From: Octopus bimaculoides
Lineage: Eukaryota
Direction: 5' to 3'
DNA: 64,000 nt
Assembly (NCBI RefSeq): GCF_001194135.2
Contig: NC_069003.1
Location: 28,149,916-28,213,915, forward strand
Part shown: piece by piece, positions 1,093 to 63,432 of the stretch
How the letters are laid out: every line of letters begins with the position of its first letter
Numbering within the stretch: the first letter of the stretch is position 1
Position numbers and translations under genes: made by a program
The notes under the pieces: generated by a model
Databases searched by the model: none
What the model was told of the DNA's origin: nothing
Seen by the model: the letters and a program-made list of their open reading frames with translations, nothing else

Positions 1093-1122
1093 CAGTAGGC
1101 TCAGTTGGAGGTTCAGTTGTAG
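1093..1122 (-). CDS. 30-nt microexon, (A)TTEPPTEPT
   Basis: Acceptor ttttgcaatag, donor G|GTAAGT, phase 1-1. Confidence 0.8.
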
Positions 1123-6622: not shown

Positions 6623-6649
6623 CTTGAGGAGGAGCTTCAGGAATAATCA
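6623..6649 (-). CDS. 27-nt linker microexon, (V)IIPEAPPQ
   Basis: Acceptor tattttgacag, donor G|GTAAGA, phase 1-1, between two VWA exons. Confidence 0.8.
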
Positions 6650-15580: not shown

Positions 15581-15595
15581 CTGGTGGTGTGCGAA
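15581..15595 (-). CDS. 15-nt microexon, (V)RTPP
   Basis: Acceptor tttttttcag, donor G|GTATGT, phase 1-1, GC-rich island in an AT-rich intron. Confidence 0.65.
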
Positions 15596-15719
15596 CTGAA
15601 AAAAATTTATAGAAAGAAAAGAAATAAGTATATTCCTTATAAGAATATTTAAAACTTAATATTTTGTCATTAAATTTTATAAATAGCTGAAACAAAAATT
15701 ATTTTATTGTTTAATTCCA

Positions 15720-16260
15720 TCAGTAGACTGGCAAGCCAGGTTAACAAACCTTTTGAAATTCTTGGTTAGTTTGATATAGTCTGAAAGAGAAACACGGTCC
15801 ATTGTTCCTTTAGATGCTTCTTCTGTTTTGAAGAATGTTGATAAGAGAATGAAGTTAAATTGACTGACTTTTAATTAGAACTGCTAAAATTTAGGAAGTT
15901 ATATTAGAAGTGTGATGAGGTACTGGGACAAATATTAAACATGGTCTCCATAGTGGTGAAATGAGACACTAGAAATAGAGATGTGAATGATCCAAACATG
16001 TTTATGTGAGGGTTATAGAATGATTAGATTCTGTGGGGATATATGAAATTGGAAAGAAATGAGCTGCTGGATGTGTAATGTCAGCATGTAATGAACAACA
16101 AAGTACAAGTATGCTGAAAAACAAAATTGGCATCATGCTTCATGTCAAATCAGATGAATGCGAATAGACAAAGTTGTTATCTATGGATAATTTTTAATTG
16201 CAATGGATTATAAAGGTGAATGATCTTGTTTTCTAAGACAGAATTTTTATCTGTGTTGGT
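15720..16260 (-). mobile_element. Degenerate remnant possibly related to 1650-2580
   Basis: Short shared words (ttctgtggggRtatat, gactgact) in the same order. Confidence 0.3.
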
Positions 16261-16384
16261 TATCTAGTCAAAGCTAGATAACAAGCATGCATAAACATTA
16301 CATCACAAATAAATTACAATGATTAGACAATACATGTGTACTATCTCAATTATACTTCTAATATCCTTTATAATTATTTTTTCA

Positions 16385-16590
16385 TTGCCCATAGAGGGCT
16401 AAATATAGAGGGGACAAACAAGGAGAGACAAAAGGATTAAGTCAATTACATCGACCCCACTGCATAACTGGTACTTATTTAATCGACCCTGAAAGGATGA
16501 AAGGCAAAATCGACCTCAGTGGAATTTTCACTCAGGATGTAATGGCAGACAAAATACTGCTAAGCATTTCACCCAGCTCACCGCTAATAT
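16385..16590 (-). mobile_element. SINE, same family
   Basis: tcgaccctgaaaggatgaaaggcaaaatcgacctc core. Confidence 0.75.
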
Positions 16591-17349
16591 CCCTTATAAT
16601 GGATAACAGAGCTCATGCTTATATTATAACAGATAAAGGAGATATTTTTTCCCTATCTACACTATTTATATTACTTAAAATACTATAATATTTACTATAC
16701 AGTGTTGATATTCTATGAGATTAATAAACAATTTCATTTTTAACTAAATAATTGAGTTCAAAGTGAGGTTGTTTTGTGTCCCACCAAGGCTGATTTGGCC
16801 TTCCAAATGTATACAAATTCTTGGAAAGGCCAGGAAAATTATGTAACTGACAAAATAGTATATACTTGAAAAACATCTGAGACAAAAGAACTGAGACACA
16901 GTAGTGTATATGAAAGAGAAAGCAAACTTTTGGACAAAAGACAACTGTGATGTGTTACTCAGGTTTGATACCAAATCAGAACTTTGATAATATTGGCACT
17001 GATAATATTGGACATTGTTGGGAGTATTATAACTTTTCCTTTCATTAGATAATATACCTAAAACACCATGTATATCTAACAATGATAACTAAATCAATAT
17101 GAAATCTGATGAAGTATGTAGAAAAAAGACCAATGAAACTACAAGTAAATATATATTATAACATAATTATGCCCTATTTTACAAATATGCACATACAAAT
17201 GGTTCATATTTTATGTCAGTCATAAGAGAAAAACTTGTAGTTATTAGACCCAAGCAAAAATGATTTAAAAATCAAACTTTGAAGGTTTTAAATGTAACAT
17301 ATTCAAGTGTCAGATAATCAGCTCCATATTTTTCAAATATTTATCTTAC

Positions 17350-17388
17350 CAGTTATAACATCCACAGGTATTATAGCTGGAGGTGCAG
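17350..17388 (-). CDS. A-type repeat exon with mutated acceptor (GG); possible 27-nt use 17350-17376, (A)IIPVDVIT
   Basis: Aligns to the 39-nt A exons and the donor is intact. The acceptor reads tttttgatgg. An internal in-frame ctccag lies 12 nt downstream. Confidence 0.45.
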
Positions 17389-17645
17389 CCATCAAAAACA
17401 TATTGTCTTATATATGAGATGAATAAACAAATATATTCTTAACAAAAATAAATTTCAGGAAATATATTGGGGGAGAGAGAGAGAGAGAGATACTTTTTAC
17501 AGCTAACAACTCAACAGAAAGTGAATTATGATTGCAATCTATTTACACTTTGGAAAGTAGTTCAAAATGATAAGTAAGGGTTTATATACAAATTATTTTA
17601 AGCACATCATTTATAGTTCAAGTGACTTTATGTATGTACTATTTA

Positions 17646-17650
<5 letters not shown>

Positions 17651-17685
<35 letters not shown>
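17651..17685. repeat. (TA)n microsatellite
   Basis: Direct reading. Confidence 0.95.
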
Positions 17686-17690
<5 letters not shown>

Positions 17691-17780
17691 TCATGGAAAA
17701 TTAATAATAATAAAAGTGACATTTTTTTTATTATGGAGGAAAAAAGTTTGTATATTTAAGTATTTCTAACTATGCTTTTA

Positions 17781-17981
17781 GTTTGTATTGACTCCAGTAC
17801 TTATTTTTTTAAAGCCTGGTACTCATTCTGTTGGTTTCTATTGCTGAACCTCAAAGTTATAGGAACATAAATACACCAACACCGGTTGTCAAGTGCTGGT
17901 ATAGGGACAAACACAGATACAAAGACACACACACATAAATGTATATATACTGGATAGGCTTCTTACAGATTCCGTCTATGA
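17781..17981. repeat. 201-bp exact duplicate of 21958-22158
   Basis: Identical base by base on inspection. Confidence 0.85.
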
Positions 17982-20900
17982 TGCATCTCTAAATACATTA
18001 TGAGTTCTCAGAATAAATCACATTGCTGCAGTTGCGTGAGGTACTGTAGGTGAAAGATGATTGTATTAAAATTTGTAGCTCCTTAAAATGAAGCATCCAA
18101 GAATGACAATCACTTAACTTCAACACTAGGAACTGGTAATTATTATAATTTGTCATATTCATCTACTACTCTTTACTTTTATAACATTTGTATCTCAATT
18201 TACTTTTACATTAATTATGGCCTTAATAGAATGCCCGAGAGTAATAATAATATATATGCTTTCAGACTACATGACACTCATATCTACCCTGTCATGAATC
18301 TCCGACAGTTTTACTGGAAGGTAAGTTCTTCTAATAAAACTAAATGCTCAATTTGTTAAATAAAAAACAAAAGGATAGTCAAATACAATATATTTCATAA
18401 TACAACTATAAAATCCCATGACGATGGTCATGGGTATAAAGTAATTTACTACCGTTACTTGAATGAACAAAATATAAAGAAAACAAATTCACTGAAATAG
18501 TTAATGTGACCATCATAATCTCACTAGTTTATATCAGTATTGTTAAATGTTTGAAAAACAATAAACTGCTTTTCATAATCTCTTATCAGCCAATGCTTTA
18601 TCAATTTCCATTTACAATTTCTTAAATAAACATGATAGAAACATAAAACAAATTCAAAACTATAACATACAATGTAACATTCACAAACCAAACAAAACAA
18701 ATGACAACAACATGATAATCTCCAATTCTTCAATATGAGTTTTTAACAAAGCTGAACAAAAAATTAATCATAAAAAGATCATATCATTTGTTAGAATAAC
18801 AGAACTATTTATTGTTAAACTTTGTTATATTTGGAGTCTAGATATTTATGAGTATATATTTTTATATCATGCATAGCTGTCTGTAATTAACACAATAATC
18901 AAACATTAAAATTCCTATGAACATTTTTTTAAACATGCCTTATATAATATTTTGAAATTAAAATTATTTGTTGTCATAGAATACTTCAATATCATGTTTA
19001 CAAATCTTCATTTAAGTCACTATACTATCTGCTGAACAATACCTGTCAGGAGAAAAGTAATTTCATCATTTTATTTAGAGCTGTGCACCCTGTCAGTTAT
19101 CACACTAATCTTGACTTTGTTCAGAGCTAAATGAAACAAATCATGAAACCATGATTTAATGAGGCATGATATTGCACAAAAGTATCAAAACAGCTGATGC
19201 CATGAAGCCTGAATGTAGATACCATCTGAATAACATATTGGCATACAGCCTCATTACAACTCAGTTTGAACAAAAACTAGAGCCTGCTTTATCAAATAAA
19301 AGAAAGCAATCACTGACACTTTTAAGACAATCTGAGTGTTCTAAAAATGTCACTCCTGGCTATTTCATCAATTTTATAATAAGCTAGTATCATTTTTTCA
19401 TTCTTTTTTTTTTTTTTGCACTAAAGACAGTGTAAATATCATTTCATTTGAAACTTGTTCTTATGAAATCTACAGTATGAATTGTAAGTGAAATTGGAAT
19501 GATTTTCAAAGAATACACAAAAGACCAAGGAGAATATTTGCATTCACAAGAATTGCACCACACCCAGAGATGGATTATTACTAAGTGATCAAATATTGTC
19601 ATATTAATAACTGAGAAAGTATTACAGTACAAGGTAATAGTGTCTTAATAATACAGGTTTGAAGGACACACACTCAACCATATACTACTTGAAAGAAAAA
19701 TATATCAAAAGAAAAATACCTCTTGAAAACAATGGCATTCTAAAAATTCAGAGTAAAGGTGCAAGTGCACTGCTGGAAATACAATATTTGAAATTCATGA
19801 TATTCTAGCAACTTTCTAACATTGACTCTTTAAAAAAGACAAGAGGAATTTTTCACTTTCAGGAAATCATTGTTCTTGCTGAGAGTGATCAGCAAGCCAG
19901 TCAAGAAACACTTACAAAAATCAAAAGTATTTAGAAATTCTTGACAATTAGGAGACTGTTGCTCTTCTTCTGTTGGATGGGAAGACATTTTCAGAAGTAT
20001 TACTCCAAAAATTATTTGTGAGAAAGATACTTCACAAAACACTAAAAATATCTTCTACCTATACCAATTGTAAGAAAGTTTCAATGAACAGAATCCATAG
20101 ACCCTAAAACAAACATTAAAAAACTGTTAACTGTACTAATTTATACTAATACCTGGGCTAAAGTACATGCACTGCTACTCTTTTAAGCATCTATAGATTT
20201 TTATGTAATAATTAGAATAAAACTAAAGACGGAAGTCTAGTTTACATGGCTTTATGGTTCATTGTTGGGAAATGCTACAAAATTTCTCTCCAATTCTATT
20301 CTATATGTTCTCAGTCTTCTTACATTTTATTTTTTCAGATACACACACAAACATAGACAGGTAATGTGTCCTGAATCCATAAGAAATTATCGTTTCTACA
20401 GTGCTTATTCAAGAGAGATGCAGCATTGACTATTTCTAAGGATGAACTCTTATTTTATTTTATTTTATTATTTTATTCCTTATGTATACAATCTGACCAA
20501 AATATTATATTACACACCATTGTTTACTGAATATCAACTGCTGCCATAAGCTTCTTTGCATCCTCAAAAGCAGGAATTTACAGAATTCTTGATATCAATT
20601 TACATTTATCACCTGTAAAACCATAGCCTTACAGGGAAAATCTTTACAGAACAGCAGTTTGCTTTTTTGTGGTGGTGTGTGGGGAGAAATAACAACATGC
20701 AAAACCATGCAAAACCCCACCAGTTATTTTTAAAGTTTTGTATTCATTCTTAAATAATATATAAGCCATAAAAAATAATGATAACTTCAATATTTATTTA
20801 TTTATATATTCTCCAGTATTTTGTTTGCAACAAAATATTAAAGTATATCTCATAAAGAAGTTCTCAAACAATAACAGTACATTAACAGTAACAATAAGCA

Positions 20901-21066
20901 CAAACAAACACTTACTTATAACAGTAACAATAAAACAATTAGAAAAAAACATAAACATACAGATTAAGACAAAATGATTAAACATTCAACATGTAAGATT
21001 TAAAATATGAAATATCATTTTTGTGTTAGACATATTAGCTATTTTTATCAGGTTCTAATTTCTTAC

Positions 21067-21105
21067 CAGACAAAATTTCCACAGGCTCTATAGGAGGAGG
21101 TACAA
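21067..21105 (-). CDS. 39-nt A-type exon, (V)VPPPIEPVEILS
   Basis: ttttaacag / G|GTAAGA, phase 1-1. Confidence 0.8.
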
Positions 21106-21884
21106 CTGTTAAAATATACATATATTCTTTTGTGAGGAAGAGAAAATATCTTTTGGTGAAGGATATATTTCAAAATAGAGTGAGCCCTATATATGAATGA
21201 TTATTCTTTATGTTATAAAAATGCAATATAAATTAAGTGTAAAGCAATGCAACATGTTGGTATTTTGCCAAAGAAGACAGATGATCATAAATTGATTTTA
21301 CTTTTAAATCTATGAGTTAAAAAAAACTCTTTACATTATCAATAAAAAATCGTGATTTGCAGTAATTGTTGGTCTTTAGCCCCATGTCATCTTTGAATAG
21401 GCAGGCCAGCAGTAATTTTTCCCAGCTTTTACTTTGTTTTAAGAATTTCTGTAAATGAGAGAGCCTGATATAATCACTTGATCTGCTAGAAATAACAGCT
21501 GAATTACTTTCAAGTTACACCTCATTACTATGATTTGCAAGAATTTTGTTTTGGTGCAAAAGGTCATTTTTGATGTAATACCAATAATATGATAATTACA
21601 TATTTGACCTAAAAGGAATGAAACTAACTCTGCCAACTTTTTTTTTTCTATGTATGAAATGAGCCTTTATAATACCAGTGATATTAATTATCCAAGTAAA
21701 AAGAGGGGATTTACTATTTAAGGACTTGCAGATCAAATTCACTACTTCTCAGTGCCTGGTATCAAACCAGTTTGTATTCTAGGTGATATAAAAATATAAT
21801 ACTGTATTCTATTAGTAATACTATACCCTGCTCTATCTATGAGTGCCTGTGTTTCTCTGACTCAGGGACTTTTAGACAACTATA

Positions 21885-22282
21885 TCTTTCATCTTACACT
21901 TGTTTCAGTCATTAAACTGTGGCCATGTTGAGGTACTACCTTGAAGAATTTTTAGTCGTTTGTATTGACTCCAGTACTTATTTTTTTAAAGCCTGGTACT
22001 CATTCTGTTGGTTTCTATTGCTGAACCTCAAAGTTATAGGAACATAAATACACCAACACCGGTTGTCAAGTGCTGGTATAGGGACAAACACAGATACAAA
22101 GACACACACACATAAATGTATATATACTGGATAGGCTTCTTACAGATTCCGTCTATGAAATCCACCCACAAGACTTGACTTGGCCTGAGGCTATAGTAGA
22201 AGAGATGTACTACGCAGTGGAACTGAACCCAGAACCACATGGTTGGGAATCAAACTTCTTACTATACAACCATGCCTGCACC
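21885..22282 (-). mobile_element. SINE of a third family (internal CA/TA tract)
   Basis: cttgtttcagtcatt...ggccatg at one end and a tRNA-like head (ggaactgaacccagaaccacatggttggg) at the other. Confidence 0.8.
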
Positions 22283-22429
22283 TAACTATATATATATGTG
22301 TGTGTGTTAACATTTTAGGTAAGATATATCGAATTACATTCACTGCTGACAACAATAAAATAATTATAACAAAATATTTGACTGAAACATAATATTTCTT
22401 TACAAAGGAGATAACAGTCTTAAAATAAT

Positions 22430-22636
22430 TTTTTTTTTCTACTCTAGGCACAAGGCCCGAAATTTTTTGGGAGGGAGCCAATCGATAAGATCGACCCCAG
22501 TACACAACTGGCACTTAATTTATCGACCCCAAAAGGATGAAATCCAAAGCTGACATCGGCAGAACTTGGACTCAGAATGTAAAGACAGACAAAATACCTC
22601 TAAGTATTTTGCCCAGTGTGCTAATGTTTCTGCCAG
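22430..22636 (-). mobile_element. SINE, same family as 35987
   Basis: Shared ctactctaggcacaaggc...gaccccaaaaggatgaaa...gaactcagaa sequence. Confidence 0.85.
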
Positions 22637-23536
22637 AGTTATGAATGTATAGCTCAATCTTCAAAACTTTGTAACATCAAATGACTAGCAAGTTCATCAT
22701 TAAGATACAGAAACCAATATTTGGAACATGGGTATGTCATTTTAACTACATAATACATTCAAGTAGTTAAAATGATGATGACACAGTCTTATGCCTTATT
22801 AGATCCTGTCAAGCTGTTCAACCAGTGCCTGCATGGAAAATGAATGCTAAATTAAGGTGAATGGTATTATATGCAGTCTTAAGATTTTTGTCTTTCTAAA
22901 TAATATTTTTACTAAAGATATAAGTTATATGCATAAAGGGACTACTTATTTACCTGAACCAATTTCATTATCACAAAAAGATGACGAAGCACTGAAATAC
23001 CTGGCGCTGTGCTGTACTCAAAAAGACTCATCCTAAACAGTAGCAGTGTTAAGGGTGCTTCTCTTGGTGAGGAGGATTGGCCTGAAAGAGTCCAGTGCCA
23101 GTGCCACATTAAAAGCACCCAGTACACACTGTAAAGTGGTAGGCATTAGGAAGGGCATCCAACCATAGAAACCAAGCCAAATAAGACTGATACAGCTCTC
23201 CAGTTCCAGTCAAAGTGTCCAACCCAAGCCAGCATGGAAAACAGACGTTAAAGGATGACTATGGTGATGATTTTATATATATATAATATATAGGTATTGG
23301 TGTGCCTGTAGAGTTAAGAAGTTTGCCTCACAATCACATGCTACTCTGTAGATCTATGAGTGCAAAATTAACTTCATTAACTATTTGCCATGTCTGCACT
23401 GATTTAAGATACACACCTATAACTGATAATAATACAAAGATATTCCGTCAGCATTATGCATCTCTATGACTAGTGATCATATAAATTCTAAGGAAATTGA
23501 CAAACTGAATTTGTATTTCTTATGCACACGCACACG

Positions 23537-23539
<3 letters not shown>

Positions 23540-23574
<35 letters not shown>
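23540..23574. repeat. (CA)n microsatellite
   Basis: Direct reading. Confidence 0.95.
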
Positions 23575-23577
<3 letters not shown>

Positions 23578-23812
23578 ATAGTGATTTCACACTAAAAGAG
23601 AGAATTTACATTCACTATTAAGAACAAGAATAACTGCAAAAGTATTAAAAAATAATTGTTTAAATGTTAATAATAATATTTTAAATACATATAATGAATT
23701 AAATATATTGTTATTAGGCTATGACTTTTTTTTATCAAATATTGTACTGCAAAGTTAAATAGTGATCATGGTTAGAATTATTGGCTATATGCTTGTTGAT
23801 TACTAATCTTAC

Positions 23813-23840
23813 CAGTTTCAATTTCCAGTTTTAATTACAG
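23813..23840 (-). pseudogene. Decayed A-type exon
   Basis: The donor and its flanking intron block are retained. The exon body is truncated after cagtttcaatttcca, with no nearby acceptor. Confidence 0.55.
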
Positions 23841-24022
23841 AATATAAAGAATGAAAAATTTTCAACATGATATATATTTGAATAAGTGAAAAGAGAAATA
23901 TGTTAATGTATGATTATATCAGGATTGAGTCGTAAAAAAAAATGTCAATTCAGAAGAATGATTTTAAATCATATTAATGAGAGATGTTAGACTAACTTCA
24001 AAATACAGTAGCAGCCATAATA

Positions 24023-25276
24023 TAAGGGTCGGTAAAAACAAGTGTATTGAAATAGTTATTATAGAAGATTAAAAACACATTGAGACTAAATATTTTACAC
24101 ATGTTTAGTTATATCTAATATTCATCCTTCGTGAAAATTTCAAGTGAATGGAGTAAATATTCCGTATGTTATGAGGAAATACAAACAATCTTCCAAATTG
24201 CAGCGGCCTAAAGTTAAGGGTCACATAGAAAAAATGAATTACTAACCGAGGTATTTTTTGTTTAGAAGAATGTTAATGGGCTAACAGTTAGTTCTTATGA
24301 TCTTACATTATTGGCACCTTCAACTGTCAACATGGCAGCTTGTAAGAGACGACCGGTATCCTGTAATGAAAAACAAGGGATTGTGTGCCTTCACCAAGAG
24401 AACAAGTCAAATTCTGTGATAGCAACTACTGTAGGAAGGTCTAGAAGTGTTGTGCAATGAATTATAATTCATTTTAAGTCATTAGGATTGACAATTGCTA
24501 AATCCAAAACTGGTAGACCTCATAAAACTTCACCAAGACAGGATTGTATTATGGTTAGAATGTCACTGAAGGACAGGTTTAAGAGAGCTGCTGAAATATC
24601 CCACAAGTTTAGCTCCACTTCTGATGTCAACATATTTCACAAAACAGTTTTTTGGAGGTTACAAGGTTCTGGGTTGCTTGCTCAGGCACTGGCAAAGCAG
24701 ATTTTTAGACAACATACCCTTCCACATCTCTGATACTTGTCAGTTCAACCTCCTATCTTCATGCAGGACTGCTCCTTGTCACACTGCGAAGAGAGTCAAA
24801 CAAAGATTTTTTGAGTGATGAAGAGGCTGATCTCATGGATTGGCTACCTCAATCTCAACCCTATAGAAAACTTTTAGAAGATTATTGGATTACTGGAAAT
24901 GGGGCACAAAGGAGAAATCCAAAGAACCAAGATGAACTCTGGGGAATTATTGAAAAATGAATGGAACAATAATACTCCATCATTTTGTGAGAAATTAATT
25001 CAGTGATAACAGATGTCAGGAAGTCATAGATAGTAAAGGGATGTTCACAAAATATTAATAGTAATGGATTCTTTTTTGTTCTTGTTCCATTTTTCATTGT
25101 TTTTCTAAGTGACACTTAACTTTTGGCCATTTTACAAAATATTTATTCCATTCACTTGAAATTTTCACGAAAGATGGATATTAGATATATCTAAATATGT
25201 GTAAAATATCTAGCGTCAACATTTTGTTAATCTTCTACAATAAATATTTCAATAAACTTGTTCCTATTGACCCTTA
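24023..25276 (+). mobile_element. Internally deleted Tc1-like DNA transposon
   Basis: Roughly 200-bp TIRs (taagggtc... / ...gaccctta). A broken transposase runs from ATG 24332, with an HTH-like N-terminus and GRPHKTSPRQD, and a WLPQS-LNPIEN remnant near 24840. Confidence 0.85.
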
Positions 25277-25278
25277 TG

Positions 25279-25511
25279 CAGGGTTGGCCAAAAGTCACCC
25301 AACAGCAAATCAAAATTCCAGAAACATCTCTACTTCTGTAATAATAACTTGAATGGAAAAATATGTCGCTCAAGAAGGACTTCAGTTTGAACAATTTTCA
25401 TGATGTTTCAGACTTGGATACTTTTATTAAATTCATTCACTTGTTAAACATAAATAAATCTTGGAATTAAATAGTTTTGATTTACCGTCAGGTGACTTTT
25501 GGCCAACACTG
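25279..25511. mobile_element. Tc1/mariner-type MITE (233 bp)
   Basis: TIRs cagggttggccaaaagtcacc / ggtgacttttggccaacactg, with TA on the right flank. Confidence 0.8.
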
Positions 25512-26346
25512 TATTATGGTCACTACTGTACTTTGATGAAATAACTTTTTGATACATTATCAATTTTTAAGTCAGTAAAAGGTTCATTATCAAATAATTG
25601 TATTACACATTTGTAACACAAAGTTTTTAACAAAAAAAAGAAAAAACCTCCATAACATAAAATACTGAAACATTATCAAGAATACACACACAATGTTGAA
25701 TGTATGTATTTCTGACTTCAATCTATTATTATGAGTTATAAAAAAAAACATCGATTATGATTTTTTTATCATCCATGTATAACATGCAAAACAGTAGTGT
25801 CCTATAAAAATAATTTGATATTTAATGTTGACATCCCAAAATATTGCTAATGTTTATAATGCTGATATCTAATAATACTGATAGCACATGATTTAATGAG
25901 GAAACTGTTGATTTTCTAGGGTAAATAGAGAAAAATAGCCATGTCTAAATGTATGACTATTGTTACAAACATACACAAAAACACATATATAAACGAAGAA
26001 ATAATGAATATTTTTGCCCTAAATTGGATGTAATATAGTGAAAATAAACTTAGTGCTATATATCAATAAAATGGCATGAAATAATGGATCTTTTAAGTAT
26101 ATTTAAATTCTTTTAATTCATTCTACTAAAACAGATATCAATAATTCCAAATAATTAATGCATGAAAATAATCACATAGTATGATCAGTATTAATTTTGA
26201 TTTTATTTCACACTATCATCCAGAGATTTTGTCCCAAACATTTGTTAGAACACTACACTGATGTAATAATCTCAATAAGTATGCAATTTCTTCATAGCAT
26301 TAATGGGAAAGGTTTAAATTTAAGAAATCTACAAAATATTATACAT

Positions 26347-26749
26347 AGGTGTAGGAGTAACTGTGTGCCAAGAAGTTTGTTTCCCAACTACAGTTTAAGG
26401 TCCAACTCTATTGCATGGCATCTTGGGCAAGAGTCTTCCACTGCAACTCCTCCAAGGTTGACCAAAAACTTGTGTGTGGATCTGGTAGATGGAAGCTGAA
26501 AGAAGCTTACTATGCATGTGCGTGTTACTGTTTCCTTGCCTTGACATTGCATAATAGTTGTAAATGCAAGTGGTGTCCTTCATTTCTAATCTACCATGAA
26601 ACCATGTTTGGTCATGAGGAATATGACTTACTTGGAAATAGATGAAGGTTGGAAACAGTAACGGCATACAGCCATAGAAAATCTACCTAAACAAATTTCA
26701 TCTGGCCCATGCAAGCATGGAAAAGTGGACATCAAAATAATGATGATGA
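26347..26749 (+). mobile_element. SINE with related head and (ATG)n-type tail
   Basis: tRNA-like head, ggcatcttgggcaag box, 3' gcatggaaaagtggac...atgatgatga. Confidence 0.7.
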
Positions 26750-27010
26750 ATTTCTCATACTCTCTTATATGATAACATACATGACTGACAATTTAGACAT
26801 GAAGGATGGCTACACATACATACACACACACACACACATACACACAATTTTGGTGAGAGTGAAGTTATGAATATTAGATTTTCTTTCACAGGTAAAAGTT
26901 GGCATGATAATATATTAGAATATAACATACACATGAAAATACTGTCAAGTTAAATAGAGTTCAAGGTTAGAATTATTAGCTATGTATTTTTCAAATGCTT
27001 ATTTTCTTAC

Positions 27011-27043
27011 CAGTTGCAATTTCCGCAGGTATGACAGGGGGAG
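27011..27043 (-). CDS. 33-nt A-type exon, (A)PPVIPAEIAT
   Basis: tttttaacag / G|GTAAGA; in-frame 6-nt deletion relative to the 39-nt copies. Confidence 0.8.
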
Positions 27044-52632: not shown

Positions 52633-54624
52633 CTAAGAAAATGATATGAAATTCGACAGTTAACTGATATAACATCATATTACCAAAGAATAATTGGGCA
52701 CTGAGTATAACATATATTACTACATAATTAATACATTCCTTATTATATATGGTATCAATAATCATAGATCATAAATTCTTATTATTTATAGACAATTGAA
52801 AATGAAAATATTTAAAAATATTCTGTCAGGTTATGTCTAAATATGTTATCAAATTTTAAGCACAATTTATCAAACCATCTCGAGTGATTTTAATTATGAT
52901 AAACACAAAGTTAAAGATGGTTTATGTATTAAACGATTTCGGTTTATTTATATCCTGAAGGGCTGAATATTTAGATATGCCATAAAAGTTATAAATATAC
53001 AATGTATTGTAACATATATCTTATGCTGAATTTGCTTGCTGATTTCTTACCTGTTAATACTTAAACATGTTTAACAAGTAAAAGAGAAGTTGGGAATATT
53101 ATGTTATCTAGTTTGTCAAACTAATCACATTAGCTTAGTATAATTTGATAAAGTGAATTATCATTTATTACATGAATTATGACATTTTATCATATCACTG
53201 GAGATTCAATATTCTCTAATTATAGACGAGAATAAATCTTTTTTCACATATAAATAATTAAAACATAGTTATTGACTACTAAGAAAGTAAATGATGTGAT
53301 GAAGAATATGAATAAGGATTATCTAAATAAGAAATCTGGTGATTAACACTGATAAAGGCAATCTATATTACATCAAACTAAAAGATAAATACCAGCTCTA
53401 TCCAGATCATATGTAATGTCATAATCTTATTATGGTTCTGACTGGGAATTAGGTAGATGCATATTATAAGACAATATGTAAGCATACATCATGTAGCATT
53501 CAATACTGAACCACTGCGTTTCTATAGAATTCATCTGAAACAATACTGATATTTTGAAACATGAATATATAACTATGAAATAACATTTTAAGTGTATTAT
53601 TTATTTTTAGTGTACCATGCTAAAATTTGAAGAACTCAGTTAGAATAATTAGTGATCAATATTCAACATTGATATCCTCCATAGAGAGAATTTTGTTGTG
53701 GCAGTCAAACAGTTTTGCAATATAATAACTAGAATTACTAGGTGAGGAGAATCATTAGGCAAGAATAAATTACCTGTATTAATAGGTACAGCTACAATTG
53801 ATCTAATGAAAACAATTTTGAACTGAATTTTCCTTCACTACTGGAATTATAATAAATGTTTCTAAATGTGAGGATATATGTCATATGATAAACTCTGTGA
53901 AACAATCTTACCAGGGACAAACTCATGCCAAAATGTTGATGAACATTAGGAGTTATTAAACGATCTATCTTAATTAGCTATAAGATGTATATATATTTTT
54001 TATGTGTCAGTCATTAGTTTGAGCCTTGAAACTGAATTTGCAGGCCTACTAATGGAAATTATGTCTGATTACATAAACATAAATCAGCTCAGGCAAAAAT
54101 TTCTGTTTTTACTTTTTGAAATGGAAAACTCAAAGCCAAGAGCTCCCAAATCATTTTTAACTTTATAAGGCTTTCACTAATGATATAGTGAATTATCCCA
54201 CACTAAGTACTTTGGCCACAATAGTGCTAATAATGTAATTTGAAGTCCAAATCATCCATTTGCTTCACTACTAAAATATAAACTTTCAGCATCTTAAATA
54301 ACACAACATTGTTTAGATAATGTGTGTTAGTAAAATTATTAGTATGATATAATAAAAACTAATTTATTGCTTTATATTATTGTTAACAATATAATTCATA
54401 GTTATGTTTGAATTAGAAAATTTTGAGTACATATTTCTTTACAACAATGTATTAAAAGAACTCTATTATGTGGGCTGACTATGGTCTACTTTATTTATTA
54501 TATATTAGGGAAAATGTTAGAAATAATAAAATAAGTATTTCAGAGAAAATTTGGAATTAATTTATCAGGCCATGGGTTTGTAGCAGTAAATTATCATTGC
54601 ACTAAATTTGGCAGTATTTCTCAA

Positions 54625-54808
54625 GGCCACCAAGTTTGGGGGNNNNNNNNNNCCCCCCCCCAGTGTTCAACTCATACTTATTTTATTGACTCTGGAAGGT
54701 TCAAAGACAAAGTCGACCTCAGTAAATTTGAACTCAGAATGTATAGAGAAATGAAATGCAACTAAGCACTTTGCTTGGTATGCTCATGATTCTACCAGCT
54801 GCTGCCTT
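54625..54808 (-). mobile_element. SINE, same family, with 12-bp TSD
   Basis: TSD agtatttctcaa at 54613-54624 and 54809-54820; contains a 10-N gap. Confidence 0.75.
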
Positions 54809-55225
54809 AGTATTTCTCAAAATATTAGAAATATGTTGATGACTTAATAAATATATTTTAAATTAAATAGCTTAAAACAGAGATTAAAGCATTATAATAT
54901 ATGAATATGAATATGGACACATAAAACATATTTTATTGCATTTGAAATGATATGTATGCTATAGTATGTACATCTTTTTGTTACATATTCTTCATTACAA
55001 TTACTGAAATGCATTTCAGCAGAGACTATTTATTTTTCACAAATATAAATTATACCAGTTATTTAATTATTAATAGCTATGTTTTAATTATAATATTAAG
55101 AATATACTTGTGGTTATAAGAATATAACATTCATTTTAAATATTTTCATGAAAGTACAGTTAAGTTAAATAATGTTCATAGTCATTAATATTAGTTCAGT
55201 TTTTGTTAGGTACTAATTTTCTTAC

Positions 55226-55264
55226 CAGCTTTAATTTCCATGGGTATAACAGGGGGAAATGCAA
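55226..55264 (-). CDS. 39-nt A exon, (V)AFPPVIPMEIKA
   Basis: tttttaacag / G|GTAAGA. Confidence 0.8.
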
Positions 55265-55790
55265 CTGTTAAAAATATATCATCTTATATGTGAGATAAAA
55301 AGGGAATGTATTTTCAAATACTTCAAAGAGATATTGTATCACATTTTGTTTATGAATTCGTTGGGTGAAATTTGTATTCCTTACAAAATGTAAAAGTTAA
55401 TATTTAAAGGAAAAATTTTTAACTATCAATATATGATCTGAAACACACATTTAAGTTTCATAAAATATTATCATGAATTCAGGCTAACATATCTAGCATT
55501 ATACAAAATATGTTGTTCTTCAATGTTGTAAAAGAATTTTAAAAATCAAATTAATAATTTTTTTTGATCACTTTTTGATAATTATTTCAAAATAATTATA
55601 TGTATATTATAGGCCATCATAGTATAATATAGTAAGTAATTTGATTATGCACAATTTAATTAGATCTATGTAGGGTATCATTAAGATGACAGAGGATTTA
55701 TAATTTCTAGTATAAATAGTATATGGGATGCAACATATAAAATTTAATGTTATTTTTAGTTCCTATTTAATTTAAACTCTGAACTCTCAC

Positions 55791-55829
55791 CAGCTGATAA
55801 TTCTACAAATTTAACTGGAACTACAGGAG
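55791..55829 (-). CDS. 39-nt B exon, (A)PVVPVKFVELSA
   Basis: attttatag / G|GTGAGA. Confidence 0.8.
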
Positions 55830-56679
55830 CTATAAAATATGAAATTTGACAATTCACTGACATAATAGCATCATATTACCATAGAATAATTAGAGACTGA
55901 GGATAACATATGTTTTTATATAATTAATACATTCCTTATCATACATAGTATCAATTAGAATAGCAAAAAACTGCCTCATTATTTACAAAAAAAAAAAAAA
56001 AGATGAAAAACAAAGAAGAATACTATGGCTCTGAAGATAGTATCATTTTTTAAGGTCATTTAATTTTTCTCAATTGATCAATGGACCAATTGAGTAAACC
56101 AATCAAAGAATGAACCTATACTCTCAAAAACAGCTGTAAGTGGAATTTACTATAATAAAGGAATATGTAATGATCATTATTTATAACTTGTCTTGTATAT
56201 CACTGTGTGTATAAAACCAGTTTACCTAGGAATACAACCTTGGGTTTACAAAGAAGAATAGTGATGAGCCTCAGACCCTCTCAGAAGCATACACAGCGTC
56301 CTTTACTAATCTAAAAAAATTTGTTAGCCTGGTGTATTTGTATTAACAGAGAGCTTATAAAGTATTTTGCCAGGATTGATGAGCCCTCGTTAATAACTCT
56401 TTGTTATACATATATATTTGGTATGAATGTAATTATTCAATGCTTGCTATTTGATGATTATACATCATTTAAAAGGTAATAGTGAGACCATGACTATTAT
56501 ACTATTATCAACAATCTTAACCTGTATATTATTCACTAAAATAGTTGTGGAAAATGAATATCTTTTTATCAATAAGTTTCATGAATTATAACATTGTATT
56601 ATATCATTGGTGAATTAATGAAGCCTGGTCATATATTAGAATAAAACTTCCCATGTAAATATGTAAAACAGGTGGATTT

Positions 56680-57248
56680 ACAGGTGGTTTTGTAACTGTT
56701 GGTATTGTTGTTGTTGCTGTTGCAACTGCACCATGCAAGCCAACAAGTCTTCCATGTTAATGATATTTTCTTTGGTTTCATATCAAAAAGAAGGATTTAA
56801 ACATCTGACGCAGGCTTCGAACATCTTGTTGCCACTTTTATATCCTTGACACATGTTGGATATATAATTAATGAAGTGGAGGTTAAATCAATGTATTCGC
56901 GTGACATACTTTGCAAGACTACCAGCCTCAATTCTTCATAAGAGTTTGGCTAGTTCATTCTTCCAATCCCCCAGGGTTGTCAATGACTCTCACGACAACA
57001 ATAGAGAACAGGAAGAGAAGGAAAAAAGAGCAGGCGATGTAAATATTGAAGCAGATTGACTAGTTCAGAGAAGCAGAGATTCTTGTAGCTAGGGTAGAAG
57101 AACTAGCAAATATGTAAGCTTGTGACTGTAGAGAAAAGCTAGCTAAATATTTTCCAATCAATGGACTGGCCATTCTTTTAGATAAGATCTCAGATTTTAA
57201 TGTGTGCAGCAACAGTACCATTTCTTGTATGTTAGCAGTGATCTAACA
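56680..57248 (-). mobile_element. Possible decayed LTR retrotransposon 5' end (LTR, PBS, gag start)
   Basis: The minus strand begins tgttag and has ccaaca at 56854, a PBS-like tggcaacaag, then MEDLLACMVQLQQQQQQYQQLQNHL*. Confidence 0.35.
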
Positions 57249-58045
57249 TGAGGCTTACTTTAATAGACATAGGAGAGAAAATGATTTAGAAGAATAGAAA
57301 CTACTTGGAAAATATGAATAGTTCAAGTGATGTAAATGGTAAATAGCAGAAACAAAATTTCTTTACAGAAGTATGATCTTAAATCTATTTCAAAATGGTA
57401 CAAAATATTTGCCACAACTTTTAGCAATTACCAGATATACAACAGGCATATTTTGATAACATGTAATGTATTAACTTTATAATAATGACACACAAAGTTT
57501 ACAAGATTTTAAAACAGGTTGATGTTACTCATGTGTTATATAGAGAGTAAAATCTTTCCCTTGAAAAATGACAAGTTTCTCAGGTAATTTTTCTTCCAGG
57601 AAAAGTCATAGTCAGCAATGCAAGTTAACCCCTTCTGATGTGATCTGTGTTTGCAGTATTATATTATACTATCTTAATAAAGGCTTTCTTACACATACAA
57701 CTTGAGACTAATGACAGTTACAAACTGCTAACTTTCAATTACACTTTTCTTATACATTATTTAAATACAAATTAAAGGTTCTCTAGATAGCTTATTATGC
57801 TTTTAGTTTTGTTACAAGCAATCAATCATTCTCTCCTGTGACTTTTACATTCTCACTATGCATTTCACAAATGGTTAATTCATATTTTTACAACATATGC
57901 CAGTCATTTGTTTTTCTGCAGCAATAAATAACATAATCTTATTAAAACATCATCACTATATCTGACATTTTCTACAAAATGCACGTTAAGATAACCCAAA
58001 GACTTCTTCATGTATGTAGAAATAATGTATCAAGTAATAAAAATG

Positions 58046-58412
58046 TGGCACTCTGTTGGTTACGACGACGAGGCTTCCAGCTGATCTGATCAATGGAACA
58101 GCCTGCTCTTGAAATTAACGTTGAAGTGGCTGAGCACTCCACAGACACGTGTACCCTTGACGTAGTTCTTGGGGAGAGTCAGCGTGACACAGTGTGTGAC
58201 AAGGCTGGCCCTTTGAAATGCAGGTACAAAAGAAACAGTGAGAAAAAGTTGTGGCGAAAGAGTACAGCAGGGTTTGCCACCACCCCCTGCTAGAGCCTTG
58301 TGGAGCTTCAGGTGTTTTCGCTCAATAAACACAATGCCTGTTCTGGGAATCGAAACAGTGATGCTACAACCACGAGTCCACTGCCCTAACCACTCAGCCA
58401 TTGTGCCTCCAC
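58046..58412 (-). mobile_element. SINE, same family as 3449-3837
   Basis: The reverse complement aligns along the length, including head and 3' region. Confidence 0.85.
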
Positions 58413-58906
58413 ATAAGATTATAGGTTCATACCAAACAAATTATGAAATTACATTTTATAACTTTGGCGAAACTATCAGATATATATATATATATATATA
58501 CATATATTATACATATTATGCAGCAATATATTAATTTACAAAACAAATATGAAAGAGGACATACATGACAATATAAACATGAAATGCTGATTTAGAAAAC
58601 TGATATTATGAAGAGTCAGCTGTAATAGTCACTTATACATCATGCTTCCTTATATCCCAAAAATTGTGTTATGTGTATATTTTTTCAACATACCCATCAT
58701 TATATGAATTAACAAATTATATTTCAACAGAGATTATTTTATTAAAACCATATATATTTAATTATAAATAACGATATGCTTTAATGAAAATATTAGGAAT
58801 ATATCTCTGGTTATTAGTATATAAAATGCACAGGAAAGTAGTTAAGTTAAATTATATTCATAGTTAAAATTAACAGCTATATTTTTGTCAAATAGTAATT
58901 TATTGC

Positions 58907-59175
58907 CAGTTATGAATTAAAGAAGTATAAAACTAAATATGTAAATAGGAATTTCACTAAAGAATGAGCTTTTAATTAGATTTTGCTAGAAATTTATTAA
59001 GATACTAAAATAATTCAAAAAAAAAATTTTTTATATGATAAACTATTATGTAAATTTTACAATATCATATGTAATGATAATTTGGTTACTGATAGCATAC
59101 AAAGCAAATATCTTAATTAATATTTATTCATATTAAATTAATCTATCAATTATTCTCAGCTTTATATAGAGGAGC
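58907..59175 (-). pseudogene. Decayed A/B exon doublet
   Basis: The A-donor flank is recognisable, but the donor reads GC and the body is 26 nt and unalignable. The B remnant gaggagctatggaaa near 59170 keeps the acceptor side only. Confidence 0.45.
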
Positions 59176-60843
59176 TATGGAAATTATATCTTTGCTTATG
59201 ATTTGATCAGCAATTCGACGATCTCATTTTAACATAATTAAGGAATTTTTACAATATTGACTTTACATTGATAAATCACGTTCTCATTAGAAAACCAAAT
59301 GGCATGGCAGTATATATATTTATACTACCTAAGTAAATAATTTTCTATAATTTTATTTCCATTAATTTTTGATAAATTAATATTATCTAATAATTCAGTT
59401 TCAGTGGTAATTAGGTACATTTTTAAACAGGACTCTGGAAATATAAATCTATTTATATTTATAACTATAATCTAATAATTTTCTGAGCCTATATGTAATA
59501 AAATAATTGAGATAACATGAGTAATTTCTAATTGACATTTTAACCTAGAGAAAAATACAGCATTCTGAACTGATGTATTATGTCACTGTAAATTCAACAA
59601 CACCAATATATAGGGTGAAAAATAAATGGAAGTTATTTTATCATTATAAAGAATTATAATTGTAATTAAACATGCATTATTAATTTTCATGTGTCACCAT
59701 CTATGATTAGAAGTGTCAAGTTAAATTAATAGAAATCTGCATGAGATGTTGAAACCACATATGTTGTACCTTGGATGAGGATAAGTTTTAATATAGCTAA
59801 TACTGAGACTCTGACAGAAGATAATTTATGCAGATAATTAACAGACATTGATAAATCTTTAAATCAATAACTCTTTTTAGTGTTTTTCTTTGTAATGTTA
59901 AGTCAGGAGGAAGGGGTATTAACTATGGCCCTCTGAAACTGACAAGTCTGATGCTGTTTATGTTCCACTTAAATGTGGAAATTCAACAACTGCAGGAAAA
60001 TATAATTAGGAAAAGAATTTCAGAATACCAACATTCTTAAACAGAAGAGTTGTTATAGAAAGTCTCAGTATCTGCACCTGTAAGTCTCTCTCCAAGGTGT
60101 AAACCTGAGCTGGTGTGTTTGTGTGTGTGAGAGAGAGACTATAGTGTCTAAGTGAAAAGTACATTCAACATAACTTTACACCTGTGTCATTGCAGAAATT
60201 GCTGTCAGAATACAAAGAACCAGAATGATACTGCAAGATATCCTATTCAACAAACTTACAGTTAATCCAATCCATCACCTTATGTACAATTTGTAGATGA
60301 GTATCAATTCTTTGCTTATGCATATTAAAAATGCATAGAAATTAATGACTAACATGAGGTGAAAACAATGTTTTTTCCTTTATGATACAAAAATAACACT
60401 GAAATATATGAATGTATGTTCTGCTGGTGATTGGCGATTTCAAAACTGTCACAAACAATGAATATATACATATACACTCATGCCTTATATTATCTTTATG
60501 CCATAATCATGCTAACTCCAGCAATTGTAAATATGCTTTGTCTATAAGTACAGTCGATTTTCTAAATATTAATACAACTCATGATTATGAATTAGTTGAT
60601 CAACTACTGAATTTGTCAGCGATTATATCAGGCACAATGTAGGAAGAAATTTTGAAGTGAATTCATAAATTTTTTTAGATAATATACAGCTTATGTTTGA
60701 TAAAAATCATAAGCTACAATAACTAATACCTAGGACGAAAGATAAGTATATTTCTTAAAATATTTAGTAAATAATAATAGTGTTAGCATTAATTGATGAG
60801 TACACGTTTTAATTTTATAAATAGTTAATTACTAAATTCTTAC

Positions 60844-60876
60844 CAGTTGATACTTCCACAGGTGGTGCTGGTGGCC
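60844..60876 (-). CDS. 33-nt B-related exon, xPPAPPVEVST (most 5' exon found)
   Basis: ttttctcag / G|GTAAGA, phase 1-1. Confidence 0.8.
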
Positions 60877-63254: not shown

Positions 63255-63432
63255 TTTTTGTTGGAGCAGGGGACAGTCAATTACACTGACCCCAGTGCTG
63301 GACTGGTACTTATTTTATCAATCCAGAAAGGACGAAAGGCAAAGTTGACCACAATGAAATTTGAACTCAGAATAATGATGAAGGAAATTTTGCTAAGTAT
63401 TTTGTTTGGTCTGCTAATGATCCTCCCAGTTC
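63255..63432 (-). mobile_element. Degenerate SINE, same family
   Basis: actggtacttatttt...aaaggacgaaaggcaaagttgacc...gaactcagaa. Confidence 0.7.

What the first reader, a model, noticed from the sequence alone, without database searches (positions are those of the whole stretch)
15581..60876. Microexon array encoding a PEVK-like repeat stalk, one 13-aa repeat per exon, upstream of VWA domains
Seen: at least 24 exons of 15-39 nt lie over 45 kb, invisible to the ORF track. All are phase 1-1 and stop-free, and the only length variants preserve frame (33, 27 and 15 nt). The splice sites survive while the introns are diverged and interrupted by transposons. The consensus doublet APPAPVKPVELTT-AAPPPVIPVEKTT is 16/26 Pro/Glu/Val/Lys, and about 290 aa results if all exons are included. 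Established: titin's elastic PEVK segment is likewise encoded by many short exons and length-tuned by alternative splicing, and VWA arrays occur in collagen VI, matrilins and molluscan matrix/adhesive proteins. Inference: this may be a convergent, splice-tunable disordered or O-glycosylated spacer on an extracellular VWA protein, since any subset of exons can be skipped in frame.
Basis: partly seen in the sequence, partly recalled or inferred. Interest (0 to 1): 0.85.

Follow-up and report, generated by a model that had tools for sequence, protein, structure and literature searches.

The report
Spliced micro-exon array, proline-rich repeat

Summary
On the minus strand, 15581-60876 carries 24 candidate micro-exons: twenty of 39 nt, two of 33, one of 27 and one of 15. 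All are phase 1-1 and stop-free. 23 of 24 have AG...GT; the 17388 copy has GG. They form nine A/B doublets (APPAPVKPVELTT / AAPPPVIPVEKTT) that duplicated as two-exon units.

Similarity between copies peaks at the exon and its 20-nt flanks and falls towards background beyond 100 nt. Exons have no indels, while the flanks have many. pN/pS is about 1.

RNA reads join exons at the predicted sites: 60876 to an A exon (skipping four predicted exons), B to A, 27043 to 21105, and 15595 to VWA1.

The libraries that express the array (X24, X43, X44) have essentially no reads on VWA2/VWA3, and X24 has none on VWA1. The library that expresses VWA2/VWA3 at depth 224 (X27) has no array contigs.

So this is a real, probably disordered repeat array, but "stalk of the VWA protein" is not supported and splice tuning is untested. 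All assembly gaps lie in intronic microsatellites. No protein, Pfam or PDB match exists. I rate it a new variant of a known kind (titin PEVK, elastin, schistosome MEGs).

The parts
60844..60876 (-). 33-nt micro-exon, GPPAPPVEVST. First array exon in the window.
   Evidence: cag|...|gtaag, phase 1-1. Six X43 RNA reads join its 3' end directly to an A-type exon identical to 50606/47817.
55791..55829 (-). A-type 39-nt exon candidate, APVVPVKFVELSA. Divergent copy.
   Evidence: tag|...|gtgag. Skipped in the X43 junction reads. Not itself sampled in RNA.
55226..55264 (-). B-type 39-nt exon candidate, VAFPPVIPMEIKA. Divergent copy.
   Evidence: Skipped in the X43 junction reads.
52594..52632 (-). 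A-type 39-nt exon candidate, APAAPVKIVELST.
   Evidence: Zero reads in X24/X43/X44 at 95% likeness.
52022..52060 (-). B-type 39-nt exon candidate, DALPLIIPVEIKT.
   Evidence: Zero reads in X24/X43/X44.
50568..50606 (-). A-type 39-nt exon, APPAPVKPVELTT. Identical in sequence to 47817-47779.
   Evidence: X43 reads at 99% or better. Six reads show exon 60876 spliced onto its 5' end.
50204..50242 (-). B-type 39-nt exon, AVPPTVIPEEKAT.
   Evidence: One partial X43 read.
47779..47817 (-). A-type 39-nt exon, APPAPVKPVELTT.
   Evidence: Same reads as 50606, which fit both places.
47368..47406 (-). B-type 39-nt exon, AAPSPVIPEEKAT.
43129..43167 (-). A-type 39-nt exon, ALPAPVKPVELTT.
   Evidence: Used as a proxy unit. 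Three X24 reads join a B-exon 3' end (42769) to the A-exon 5' start (43167).
42769..42807 (-). B-type 39-nt exon, AAPPPVIPVEKTT. Matches the B consensus.
   Evidence: depth 5-6 in X24 and the B-to-A junction. Four reads run unspliced past its donor.
38877..38903 (-). 27-nt exon candidate, VLSSKPVSA.
   Evidence: cag|...|gtaag, phase 1-1, no stop. No RNA test.
38548..38586 (-). A-type 39-nt exon, APAAPIKPVELTT.
38240..38278 (-). B-type 39-nt exon, AAPPLVIPEEKTT.
35513..35551 (-). A-type 39-nt exon, APAAPVTPVELTT. Weak aaAG acceptor; an in-frame CAG at 35543 would give a 30-nt form.
35134..35172 (-). B-type 39-nt exon, AVPPPVIPEEKTT.
33264..33302 (-). A-type 39-nt exon, APPAPVKPVELTT.
   Evidence: The gap 33114-33159 lies in its A-to-B intron, inside (AT)n. 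Both intron ends align with paralogous introns.
32788..32826 (-). B-type 39-nt exon, AAPPPVIPVEKIT.
29011..29049 (-). A-type 39-nt exon, APPAPVKPVELAT.
28430..28468 (-). B-type 39-nt exon, AAPSPVIPVEIKT.
27011..27043 (-). 33-nt B-derived exon, APPVIPAEIAT.
   Evidence: Four X44 reads show ...TG | this exon | exon 21105.
21067..21105 (-). Divergent B-type 39-nt exon, VVPPPIEPVEILS. Last array exon with RNA support.
   Evidence: 12 reads in X43/X44/X24. Coverage is confined to the exon and is zero in both flanks.
17350..17388 (-). Decayed B-type copy, AAPPAIIPVDVIT, with GG in place of the AG acceptor.
   Evidence: Zero RNA depth over 17128-17378 in X24-X27.
15581..15595 (-). 15-nt micro-exon, VRTPP.
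   Evidence: An X27 RNA contig joins it to the VWA1 exon at 12317. It is conserved with cag/gtatg in a related species' contig, L001.
11871..12317 (-). VWA1 exon, 447 nt, phase 1-1. A neighbour, not shown to be joined to the array.
   Evidence: Pfam PF00092, E=2.9e-23. Contig junctions at 12317 and 11871. Depth about 15 in X27, 0 in X24.
7728..8297 (-). VWA2 exon, 570 nt, phase 1-1. A neighbour.
   Evidence: Pfam PF00092, E=2.7e-42. X27 contig depth 224; essentially no reads (at most one or two partial) in X24/X43/X44.
6623..6649 (-). 27-nt linker micro-exon, VIIPEAPPQ, between VWA2 and VWA3.
   Evidence: Both junctions lie in one 920-nt X27 contig.
5041..5610 (-). VWA3 exon, 570 nt, phase 1-1. 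A neighbour.
   Evidence: Pfam PF00092. Junction 5610/6623 in X27. tblastn.

Best explanation
The region holds a real, transcribed tandem array of symmetric (phase 1-1) micro-exons on the minus strand.

Origin. It arose by repeated duplication of a two-exon unit, an A exon and a B exon about 270-540 nt apart, with units 2-4.6 kb apart.

How the frame is kept. Each 39-nt exon encodes one 13-residue repeat. Every exon ends in G, and the next exon supplies the last two bases of the split codon. Any exon-to-exon join is therefore in frame, and the junction residue (Ala, Val, Asp or Gly) is set by the downstream exon.

Product (inferred). About 28% Pro, 16% Ala, 14% Val, 12% Thr, 10% Glu, 6% Lys, with no Cys or aromatic residues. 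The most likely reading is an unfolded, extended spacer rich in polyproline-II. The TT pair that ends each repeat is a candidate O-glycosylation site. Selection appears to act on splicing, exon length and composition, not on individual residues.

Transcript context. In the RNA available, the array is spliced exon to exon but is not joined to the neighbouring VWA exons, which are expressed in other libraries. The array therefore most likely belongs to its own transcript, either a separate gene or a VWA-less isoform. Its 5' and 3' ends lie outside what I could sample.

Shown: exon boundaries, splicing, skipping of four predicted exons, and lack of co-expression with the VWA exons. Inferred: translation, disorder, glycosylation and spacer function.
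For: Anatomy:
- 24 candidates, all phase 1-1; 23 have AG...GT.

Constraint:
- Identity among copies peaks at the exon and its 20-nt flanks (0.81-0.88). It falls to 0.5-0.6 beyond 100 nt, against 0.41-0.44 for random pairs.
- The exons have 0 gapped columns, against 13-41 in the 60-nt flanks.
- Donor GT is kept in all copies. AG is kept in all nine A-type and ten of eleven B-type copies.

Duplication history:
- The A and B similarity matrices are correlated: Mantel r=0.67, 26 of 5000 permutations.

Splicing:
- Six X43 reads join exon 60876 to an A exon.
- Three X24 reads join a B 3' end to an A 5' start.
- Four X44 reads join 27043 to 21105.
- 12 reads in three runs cover only exon 21105, with zero depth in its flanks.

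Separation from the VWA exons:
- X24/X43/X44 have essentially no reads on VWA2, the 27-nt linker or VWA3. About 19 reads would be expected on VWA2 at the array's depth.
- X24 has none on VWA1.
- X27 has VWA2/VWA3 at depth 224 and no contig on array exons.

No fold family: Pfam, NCBIfam and PDB give nothing even at E<=10.
Against: - pN/pS is about 1 (0.95 for A, 1.22 for B), and variation is even across codon positions. There is no sequence-level proof of translation.
- The stop-free state is only marginally unlikely under neutrality (P=0.08).
- RNA support is thin: 3-6 reads per junction, from about 6% of each run.
- Only about six distinct exons are directly seen in RNA.
- Several X24 reads are unspliced at the B donor, and carry variants not found in any window copy.
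- The exon that follows 21105 and the exon that precedes 60876 were not identified, so no start, stop or signal peptide is known.
- Absence of array contigs in X25-X27 is weak evidence, because k=31 contigs collapse on repeated 39-nt exons.
- Same strand, collinearity, shared phase, and P/T-rich micro-exons around and after the VWA exons all fit a single large gene.
Confidence: 0.6

Rival explanations
1. The array is the N-terminal stalk of the VWA protein. Array exons and VWA1-3 are in one mRNA in some tissue, and stalk length is tuned by exon skipping.
For: - Same strand and collinear order. Every exon is phase 1-1, including VWA1 (447 nt), VWA2 (570 nt), VWA3 (570 nt) and the 27-nt linker.
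- The P-rich 15-nt exon 15595 is spliced to VWA1.
- The exon upstream of it in that RNA (...PVPT) is absent from the contiguous sequence above 15595. The 5' exons of the VWA1 isoform must therefore lie further upstream, in a gap or beyond the array, which would put array exons inside its pre-mRNA.
- PT-rich micro-exon candidates after VWA3 (1122-1093, 419-393) share the ACTG|gtaag exon end.
Against: - Libraries with array reads at depth 3-6 have essentially no VWA2/VWA3 reads, and X24 has no VWA1 reads.
- The library with VWA2/VWA3 at depth 224 has no contig on the unique-sequence exons 21105 and 27043.
- The VWA1 contig continues upstream into a non-array exon.
Confidence: 0.2
2. The array is transcribed and spliced but has no protein function. 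It would be a decaying or noisy set of duplicated cassettes, for example part of a non-coding or nonsense-prone transcript.
For: - pN/pS is about 1, with no third-position excess of variation.
- The stop-free state has P=0.08 under neutrality.
- Expression is low and some reads are unspliced.
- One copy is dead and four are unused.
- No homologous protein was found among 5.8 billion sequences.
Against: - No indel occurs in the 20 exons of 39 nt, although the flanks are full of them.
- Conservation peaks on the exons.
- The claimed frame is open in all 20 copies of 39 nt. The other two frames carry stops in 8 of 9 A copies, and in 3 and 5 of 11 B copies.
- A pN/pS near 1 is the usual behaviour of disordered low-complexity repeats.
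Confidence: 0.12
3. The array is the PEVK-type spring segment of a giant muscle protein (titin/sallimus-like). Its other exons would lie outside the window, with the VWA gene sitting next to it or nested in it.
For: - The P/E/V/K fraction is 0.54-0.69 in 17 of 24 exons. That is about the 0.54 compositional threshold used to annotate titin PEVK exons (PMC6469411).
- The architecture is many short symmetric exons.
Against: - No Pfam match at E<=10, so the PPAK motif family is not matched either.
- The repeat is 13 residues, not about 28.
- The repeat is Thr-rich and net acidic (net charge -9 over 217 aa).
- No Ig or Fn3 exon was noticed in the window; only VWA was searched for explicitly.
Confidence: 0.05

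Closest known systems
Titin PEVK segment (vertebrate TTN; about 113 annotated human PEVK exons, PMC6469411)
   Same: Many short, symmetric, tandemly duplicated exons. Each encodes one unit of a Pro/Glu/Val/Lys-rich unfolded repeat. Duplication proceeds in multi-exon blocks. Annotation pipelines miss the exons. Exon skipping changes segment length.
   Different: Exons here are 39 nt (13 aa), not about 75-84 nt (the roughly 28-aa PPAK unit). There is no sequence or profile match. The repeat is Thr-rich and net acidic. No Ig/Fn3 context is present. Regulated splicing has not been shown.
Schistosome micro-exon genes (MEGs; PMC10526429)
   Same: The coding sequence is built from very short symmetric exons (3-81 bp in MEGs), separated by introns of up to several kb. 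Products are disordered, variable, and diversified by exon skipping.
   Different: MEG exons are not copies of one another. MEGs are small genes with a signal-peptide exon and a terminal exon, neither of which was found here. There is no sequence similarity. MEGs are described from parasitic trematodes, whereas this window is probably molluscan, judged only from the best VWA hits.
Elastin and other phase 1-1 cassette genes (established knowledge; exon-phase symmetry and disorder, PMC3632108)
   Same: All exons split the codon after its first base, which is a G. Any cassette can therefore be skipped without a frame shift. The modules are disordered and encoded by symmetric exons.
   Different: There is no alternation of hydrophobic and Lys-Ala cross-linking domains. 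The repeats are far shorter and more uniform.
Collagen VI alpha-3 / matrilin-type VWA proteins (for the neighbouring exons)
   Same: One VWA domain per phase 1-1 exon of about 570 nt, with short linker exons. The best hits are molluscan proteins named 'collagen alpha-3(VI)' and 'cartilage matrix protein-like', at 40-55% identity.
   Different: No collagen triple-helix exon was seen in the window. The link to the micro-exon array is not supported by RNA.

Membership tests
Titin PEVK / PPAK repeats | Exons with a P+E+V+K fraction of about 0.54 or more (PEVK_Finder criterion, PMC6469411). | tested here: met
   17 of 24 exons have 7/13 to 9/13 (0.54-0.69). The consensus doublet is 16/26.
Titin PEVK / PPAK repeats | Sequence match to the PPAK motif or repeat profile (about 28 residues). 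| tested here: not met
   Pfam-A scan of the 217-aa spliced peptide gives 0 families at E<=10. The period is 13 (or 26) residues.
Titin PEVK / PPAK repeats | Embedded in a giant muscle gene between Ig/Fn3 exons. | tested here: inconclusive
   The only domain exons found in the window are VWA. Ig/Fn3 exons were not searched with profiles, and the gene's ends lie outside the sampled sequence.
Micro-exon genes (MEG-like architecture) | Most of the coding sequence lies in symmetric micro-exons whose lengths are multiples of three, separated by long introns. | tested here: met
   Exon lengths are 15, 27, 33 and 39 nt, all phase 1-1. Introns are 269-4200 nt.
Micro-exon genes (MEG-like architecture) | A 5' exon with a signal peptide and a conventional 3' exon. 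| tested here: inconclusive
   No ATG, hydrophobic, phase-1 donor exon was found in 60877-64000. Reads carry a median of 78 nt upstream of the A exon, so about 45 nt lie beyond exon 60876; only 30 nt are shown, and all of them fall within exon 60876. The exon downstream of 21067 was not recovered.
Micro-exon genes (MEG-like architecture) | Protein variation produced by alternative exon inclusion. | tested here: inconclusive
   Six reads skip four predicted exons. No library shows those exons included, so alternative use is unproven.
VWA-domain matrix protein carrying the array as a stalk | VWA domains are present and expressed. | tested here: met
   PF00092 on three exons. A spliced X27 contig at depth 224.
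VWA-domain matrix protein carrying the array as a stalk | Array exons and VWA exons lie in the same mRNA. | tested here: not met
   Array-positive runs have essentially no VWA2/VWA3 reads, and X24 has no VWA1 reads. The VWA-positive run has no array contigs. Only exon 15595 joins VWA1.
Mucin-type O-glycosylated spacer | Ser/Thr-Pro-rich tandem repeats that are O-glycosylated on a secreted protein. | not testable with these tools
   Composition fits: 12% Thr, 28% Pro, and a TT pair ending each repeat. No signal peptide is known and no glycosylation data are available.

The most novel reading that the evidence does not exclude
The array may be the core of a mollusc micro-exon gene. In this reading, a secreted or surface protein is built almost entirely from more than 20 interchangeable 13-residue cassettes, and its length and composition are varied combinatorially by exon choice. 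That would parallel schistosome MEGs and titin PEVK. It might share a transcription unit with a VWA gene, so that one locus yields mutually exclusive 'repeat-only' and 'VWA-only' products.
Probability: 0.2. Interest if true: 0.75.

Novelty: new variant of a known kind. Interest (0 to 1): 0.5.

Why it matters
Arrays of 39-nt exons are invisible to ORF-based and most homology-based annotation. Searches of 5.8 billion predicted proteins found no protein carrying this repeat, and found neither VWA1 nor VWA2 as part of a gene model from this organism. This is therefore probably an unannotated product.

It is a clean natural example of how duplication of symmetric micro-exons builds a disordered repeat. 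Selection can be seen on splicing signals and exon length, but not on residues.

If exon choice proves to be regulated, the locus would be an invertebrate counterpart of titin-PEVK or MEG-type length and variant tuning. It would also be a useful test case for micro-exon-aware alignment and annotation.

Tried and rejected
- (42100-54600) was swamped by repeats at 42185-42330 and 47630-47700.
- RNA contigs of X25-X27 never laid on array exons. This is uninformative for the repeated exons, because k=31 contigs collapse on them.
- A protein search with the 269-aa concatenated repeat found nothing.
- The VWA1 search found only a genomic ORF from a relative. The VWA2 search found only homologues at 55% identity or less. 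No gene model of this organism could be consulted.
- The look-up of encoding contigs on window ORFs returned 'not on record', so I could not walk beyond the window or across gaps.
- Pfam, NCBIfam, PDB and Rfam gave no hits.
- The exon ending ACCAGTACCCACAG was searched with mismatches, and as every suffix followed by GT. It was absent from the window and from L001.
- A scan of 60877-64000 for a signal-peptide first exon found none.
- The transposon claim has only weak support: Tc3/HTH hits at E of about 0.005-0.02, below the Pfam thresholds.
- Literature searches found no description of such an array in cephalopods or molluscs.
- I rejected loose ends at 15643, 12731 and 10208 as exon evidence. 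Their continuations are not in the window and behave as dispersed repeats.

Full report
**The window and the observation**

The window is AT-rich eukaryotic DNA (about 29% GC) with six N-gaps. The finding lies on the minus strand. Six-frame motif searches, an AG...GT phase scan and nhmmer profiles built from the exons recover 24 candidate micro-exons between 60876 and 15581.
- Twenty are 39 nt, two are 33 nt (60876-60844 and 27043-27011), one is 27 nt (38903-38877) and one is 15 nt (15595-15581).
- They fall into two alternating types, A (consensus APPAPVKPVELTT) and B (AAPPPVIPVEKTT).
- There are nine A/B doublets. Introns are 269-542 nt from A to B, and 1.4-4.2 kb from B to the next A.
- Every exon ends in G and is open in phase 1-1. 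23 of 24 have AG...GT; the 17388 copy has GG.
- Together they encode 296 aa. The consensus doublet is 16/26 P/E/V/K.

**The gaps**

All five gaps inside the finding lie in intronic simple repeats: (AC)n at 30688, (AT)n at 33114, CA/TA-rich tracts at 39946 and 41151, and a G/C run at 54643.
- No gap touches an exon.
- Each exon is a closed phase 1-1 cassette, so the gaps cannot affect the frame.
- For the 33114 gap, both ends of the interrupted A-to-B intron align with the paralogous introns, which supports order and orientation.
- Hidden extra copies remain possible. X24 reads carry a B-type variant (42795 G>A, 42803 T>G) that matches no copy in the window.
- I had no read-laying runs left to test DNA continuity across the gaps.

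**Is it more than chance?**

The copies are plainly homologous, so the real question is whether they are under constraint as exons.
- Identity among copies is 0.88 (A) and 0.81 (B) in the exon, and 0.80-0.86 in the adjacent 20 nt. It falls to 0.5-0.6 beyond 100 nt, against 0.41-0.44 for random window pairs.
- The exons have no gapped alignment column. The 60-nt flanks have 13-41.
- GT is invariant across copies. AG is lost only in the 17388 copy.
- pN/pS is 0.95 (A) and 1.22 (B), and variation is even across codon positions.
- The absence of stops has P=0.08 under neutral substitution.
- The A and B similarity matrices are correlated (Mantel r=0.67, 26 of 5000 permutations), so the doublet duplicated as a unit.

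The constraint is therefore on splicing, length and frame, not on individual residues. That is what one expects of a low-complexity spacer. On its own it does not prove translation.

**RNA evidence for the array**

Raw RNA reads of the same species (X24, X43, X44, about 6% of each run read) and RNA contigs (X25-X29) were laid on selected stretches.
- Six X43 reads carry exon 60876 fused exactly to the 5' end of an A exon identical to 50606/47817. They therefore skip the predicted exons 55829, 55264, 52632 and 52060. Of those four, 52632 and 52060 lay in the sampled stretch, and both have zero depth there.
- One A/B unit was used as a proxy for all copies. On it, three X24 reads join a B 3' end (42769) to an A 5' start (43167). 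Four reads run unspliced past the B donor.
- Exon 21105-21067 is covered by 12 reads in three runs, with zero depth in both flanks. Four X44 reads show ...TG | 27043-27011 | 21105.
- The 17388 copy with the GG acceptor has no coverage.

The array is transcribed and spliced at the predicted boundaries. Not all predicted exons are used.

**Relation to the VWA exons**

Three VWA exons follow on the same strand: 12317-11871, 8297-7728 and 5610-5041 (Pfam PF00092). All are phase 1-1.

In X27:
- One 920-nt contig at depth 224 joins VWA2, a 27-nt linker exon (6649-6623) and VWA3.
- VWA2 is preceded by an exon ending at 9243.
- VWA1 reaches a depth of only about 15. One contig joins it to the 15-nt exon 15595, and then to 14 nt (ACCAGTACCCACAG, encoding ..PVPT). 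That sequence occurs nowhere in the window or in the related contig L001.

In the array-positive runs:
- X24, X43 and X44 show essentially no reads on VWA2, the linker or VWA3. About 19 reads would be expected on VWA2 at the array's depth.
- X24 shows none on VWA1.

X27 has no contig on the unique-sequence exons 21105 and 27043.

In the sampled RNA, array exons and VWA exons are therefore mutually exclusive.

**What it most likely is and how it works**

The best-supported reading is a micro-exon array that encodes an unfolded proline-rich repeat.
- The composition is 28% P, 16% A, 14% V, 12% T, 10% E and 6% K, with a net charge of -9 over 217 aa.
- Because the split codon always starts with G, any subset of exons joins in frame.
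- No fold family matches: Pfam, NCBIfam and PDB give nothing at E<=10.
- An extended polyproline-II-like conformation, O-glycosylation of the TT pairs and a spacer role are inferences from composition.
- The array most likely belongs to its own transcript or to a VWA-less isoform.
- Same strand, collinearity, shared phase, and the fact that the upstream exon of the VWA1 isoform is missing from the contiguous sequence keep the single-gene model alive at about 0.2.

**Comparison with known systems**

In architecture it works like titin's PEVK exons (PMC6469411), elastin-type phase 1-1 cassettes (see also PMC3632108) and schistosome micro-exon genes (PMC10526429).
- It is not a member of the PEVK/PPAK family by sequence.
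- It lacks demonstrated MEG hallmarks such as a signal-peptide exon.
- No protein with this repeat exists among 5.8 billion predicted proteins.
- No paper describing it was found.

I classify it as a new variant of a known kind, of moderate interest. The claimed VWA stalk and splice tuning remain unproven.

Noticed in passing
window 10469-10513: One X26 RNA contig differs from the genome by five T>C changes within 45 nt. On the minus-strand transcript these are A>G, a pattern like clustered A-to-I editing.
   Followed up: no
window 6623-6649 (minus): A 27-nt phase 1-1 linker micro-exon (VIIPEAPPQ) lies between VWA2 and VWA3. Both junctions are confirmed in a depth-224 X27 contig.
   Followed up: partly
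window 9243-9284 (minus): The exon spliced onto VWA2 ends at 9243, with 30 nt verified in RNA. A cag acceptor at 9285-9287 would make it a 42-nt phase 1-1 exon (EPTHTAPKYAFQKF). An in-frame ATG just upstream is the alternative reading.
   Followed up: partly
window 1093-1122 and 393-419 (minus): Two further phase 1-1 micro-exon candidates lie downstream of VWA3 (ATTEPPTEPT, VPTTTPTTT). They have the same ACTG|gtaag exon end as the array and would encode a mucin-like PT linker.
   Followed up: no
upstream of window 15595 (not in window): The X27 transcript has an exon ending ACCAGTACCCACAG (..PVPT) directly before the 15-nt exon. It is absent from the window and from L001, so it lies in a gap, beyond 64000, or in unassembled sequence.
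   Followed up: partly
A-type exons, e.g. window 50597/50598, 47808/47809, 35542/35543: All A-type exons except 55829 carry an in-frame internal acceptor (CAG|CTCCAG) 9 nt into the exon. It would give a 30-nt form lacking APP. In 35551 the outer acceptor is the weak aaAG.
   Followed up: no
window 42795 and 42803: X24 RNA reads on the B exon carry G>A and T>G relative to the window. No copy in the window has this combination, which suggests another copy in a gap or elsewhere, or an allele.
   Followed up: no
window 11871-12317 versus 5041-8297: In X27, VWA1 has about 15-fold lower contig depth than VWA2/VWA3. Some contigs run unspliced into the intron above 12317. VWA1 is either a rarely included cassette or belongs to a minor isoform with a far-upstream start.
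   Followed up: partly
window 42185-42330, 47630-47700, 16375-16625; ORFs 44675-44923 and 24488-24733: Dispersed repeats with very high RNA depth, in the thousands, sit in the introns. Two ORFs give weak Tc1/mariner-type HTH hits (E of 0.005-0.02, below Pfam thresholds).
   Followed up: partly
L001 947-961 (related species, Logan contig SRR11869391_325128): The 15-nt exon is conserved as TTCACACACCACCAG (Arg to His), with intact cag/gtatg. The surrounding genomic sequence is 84-92% identical to the window.
   Followed up: partly
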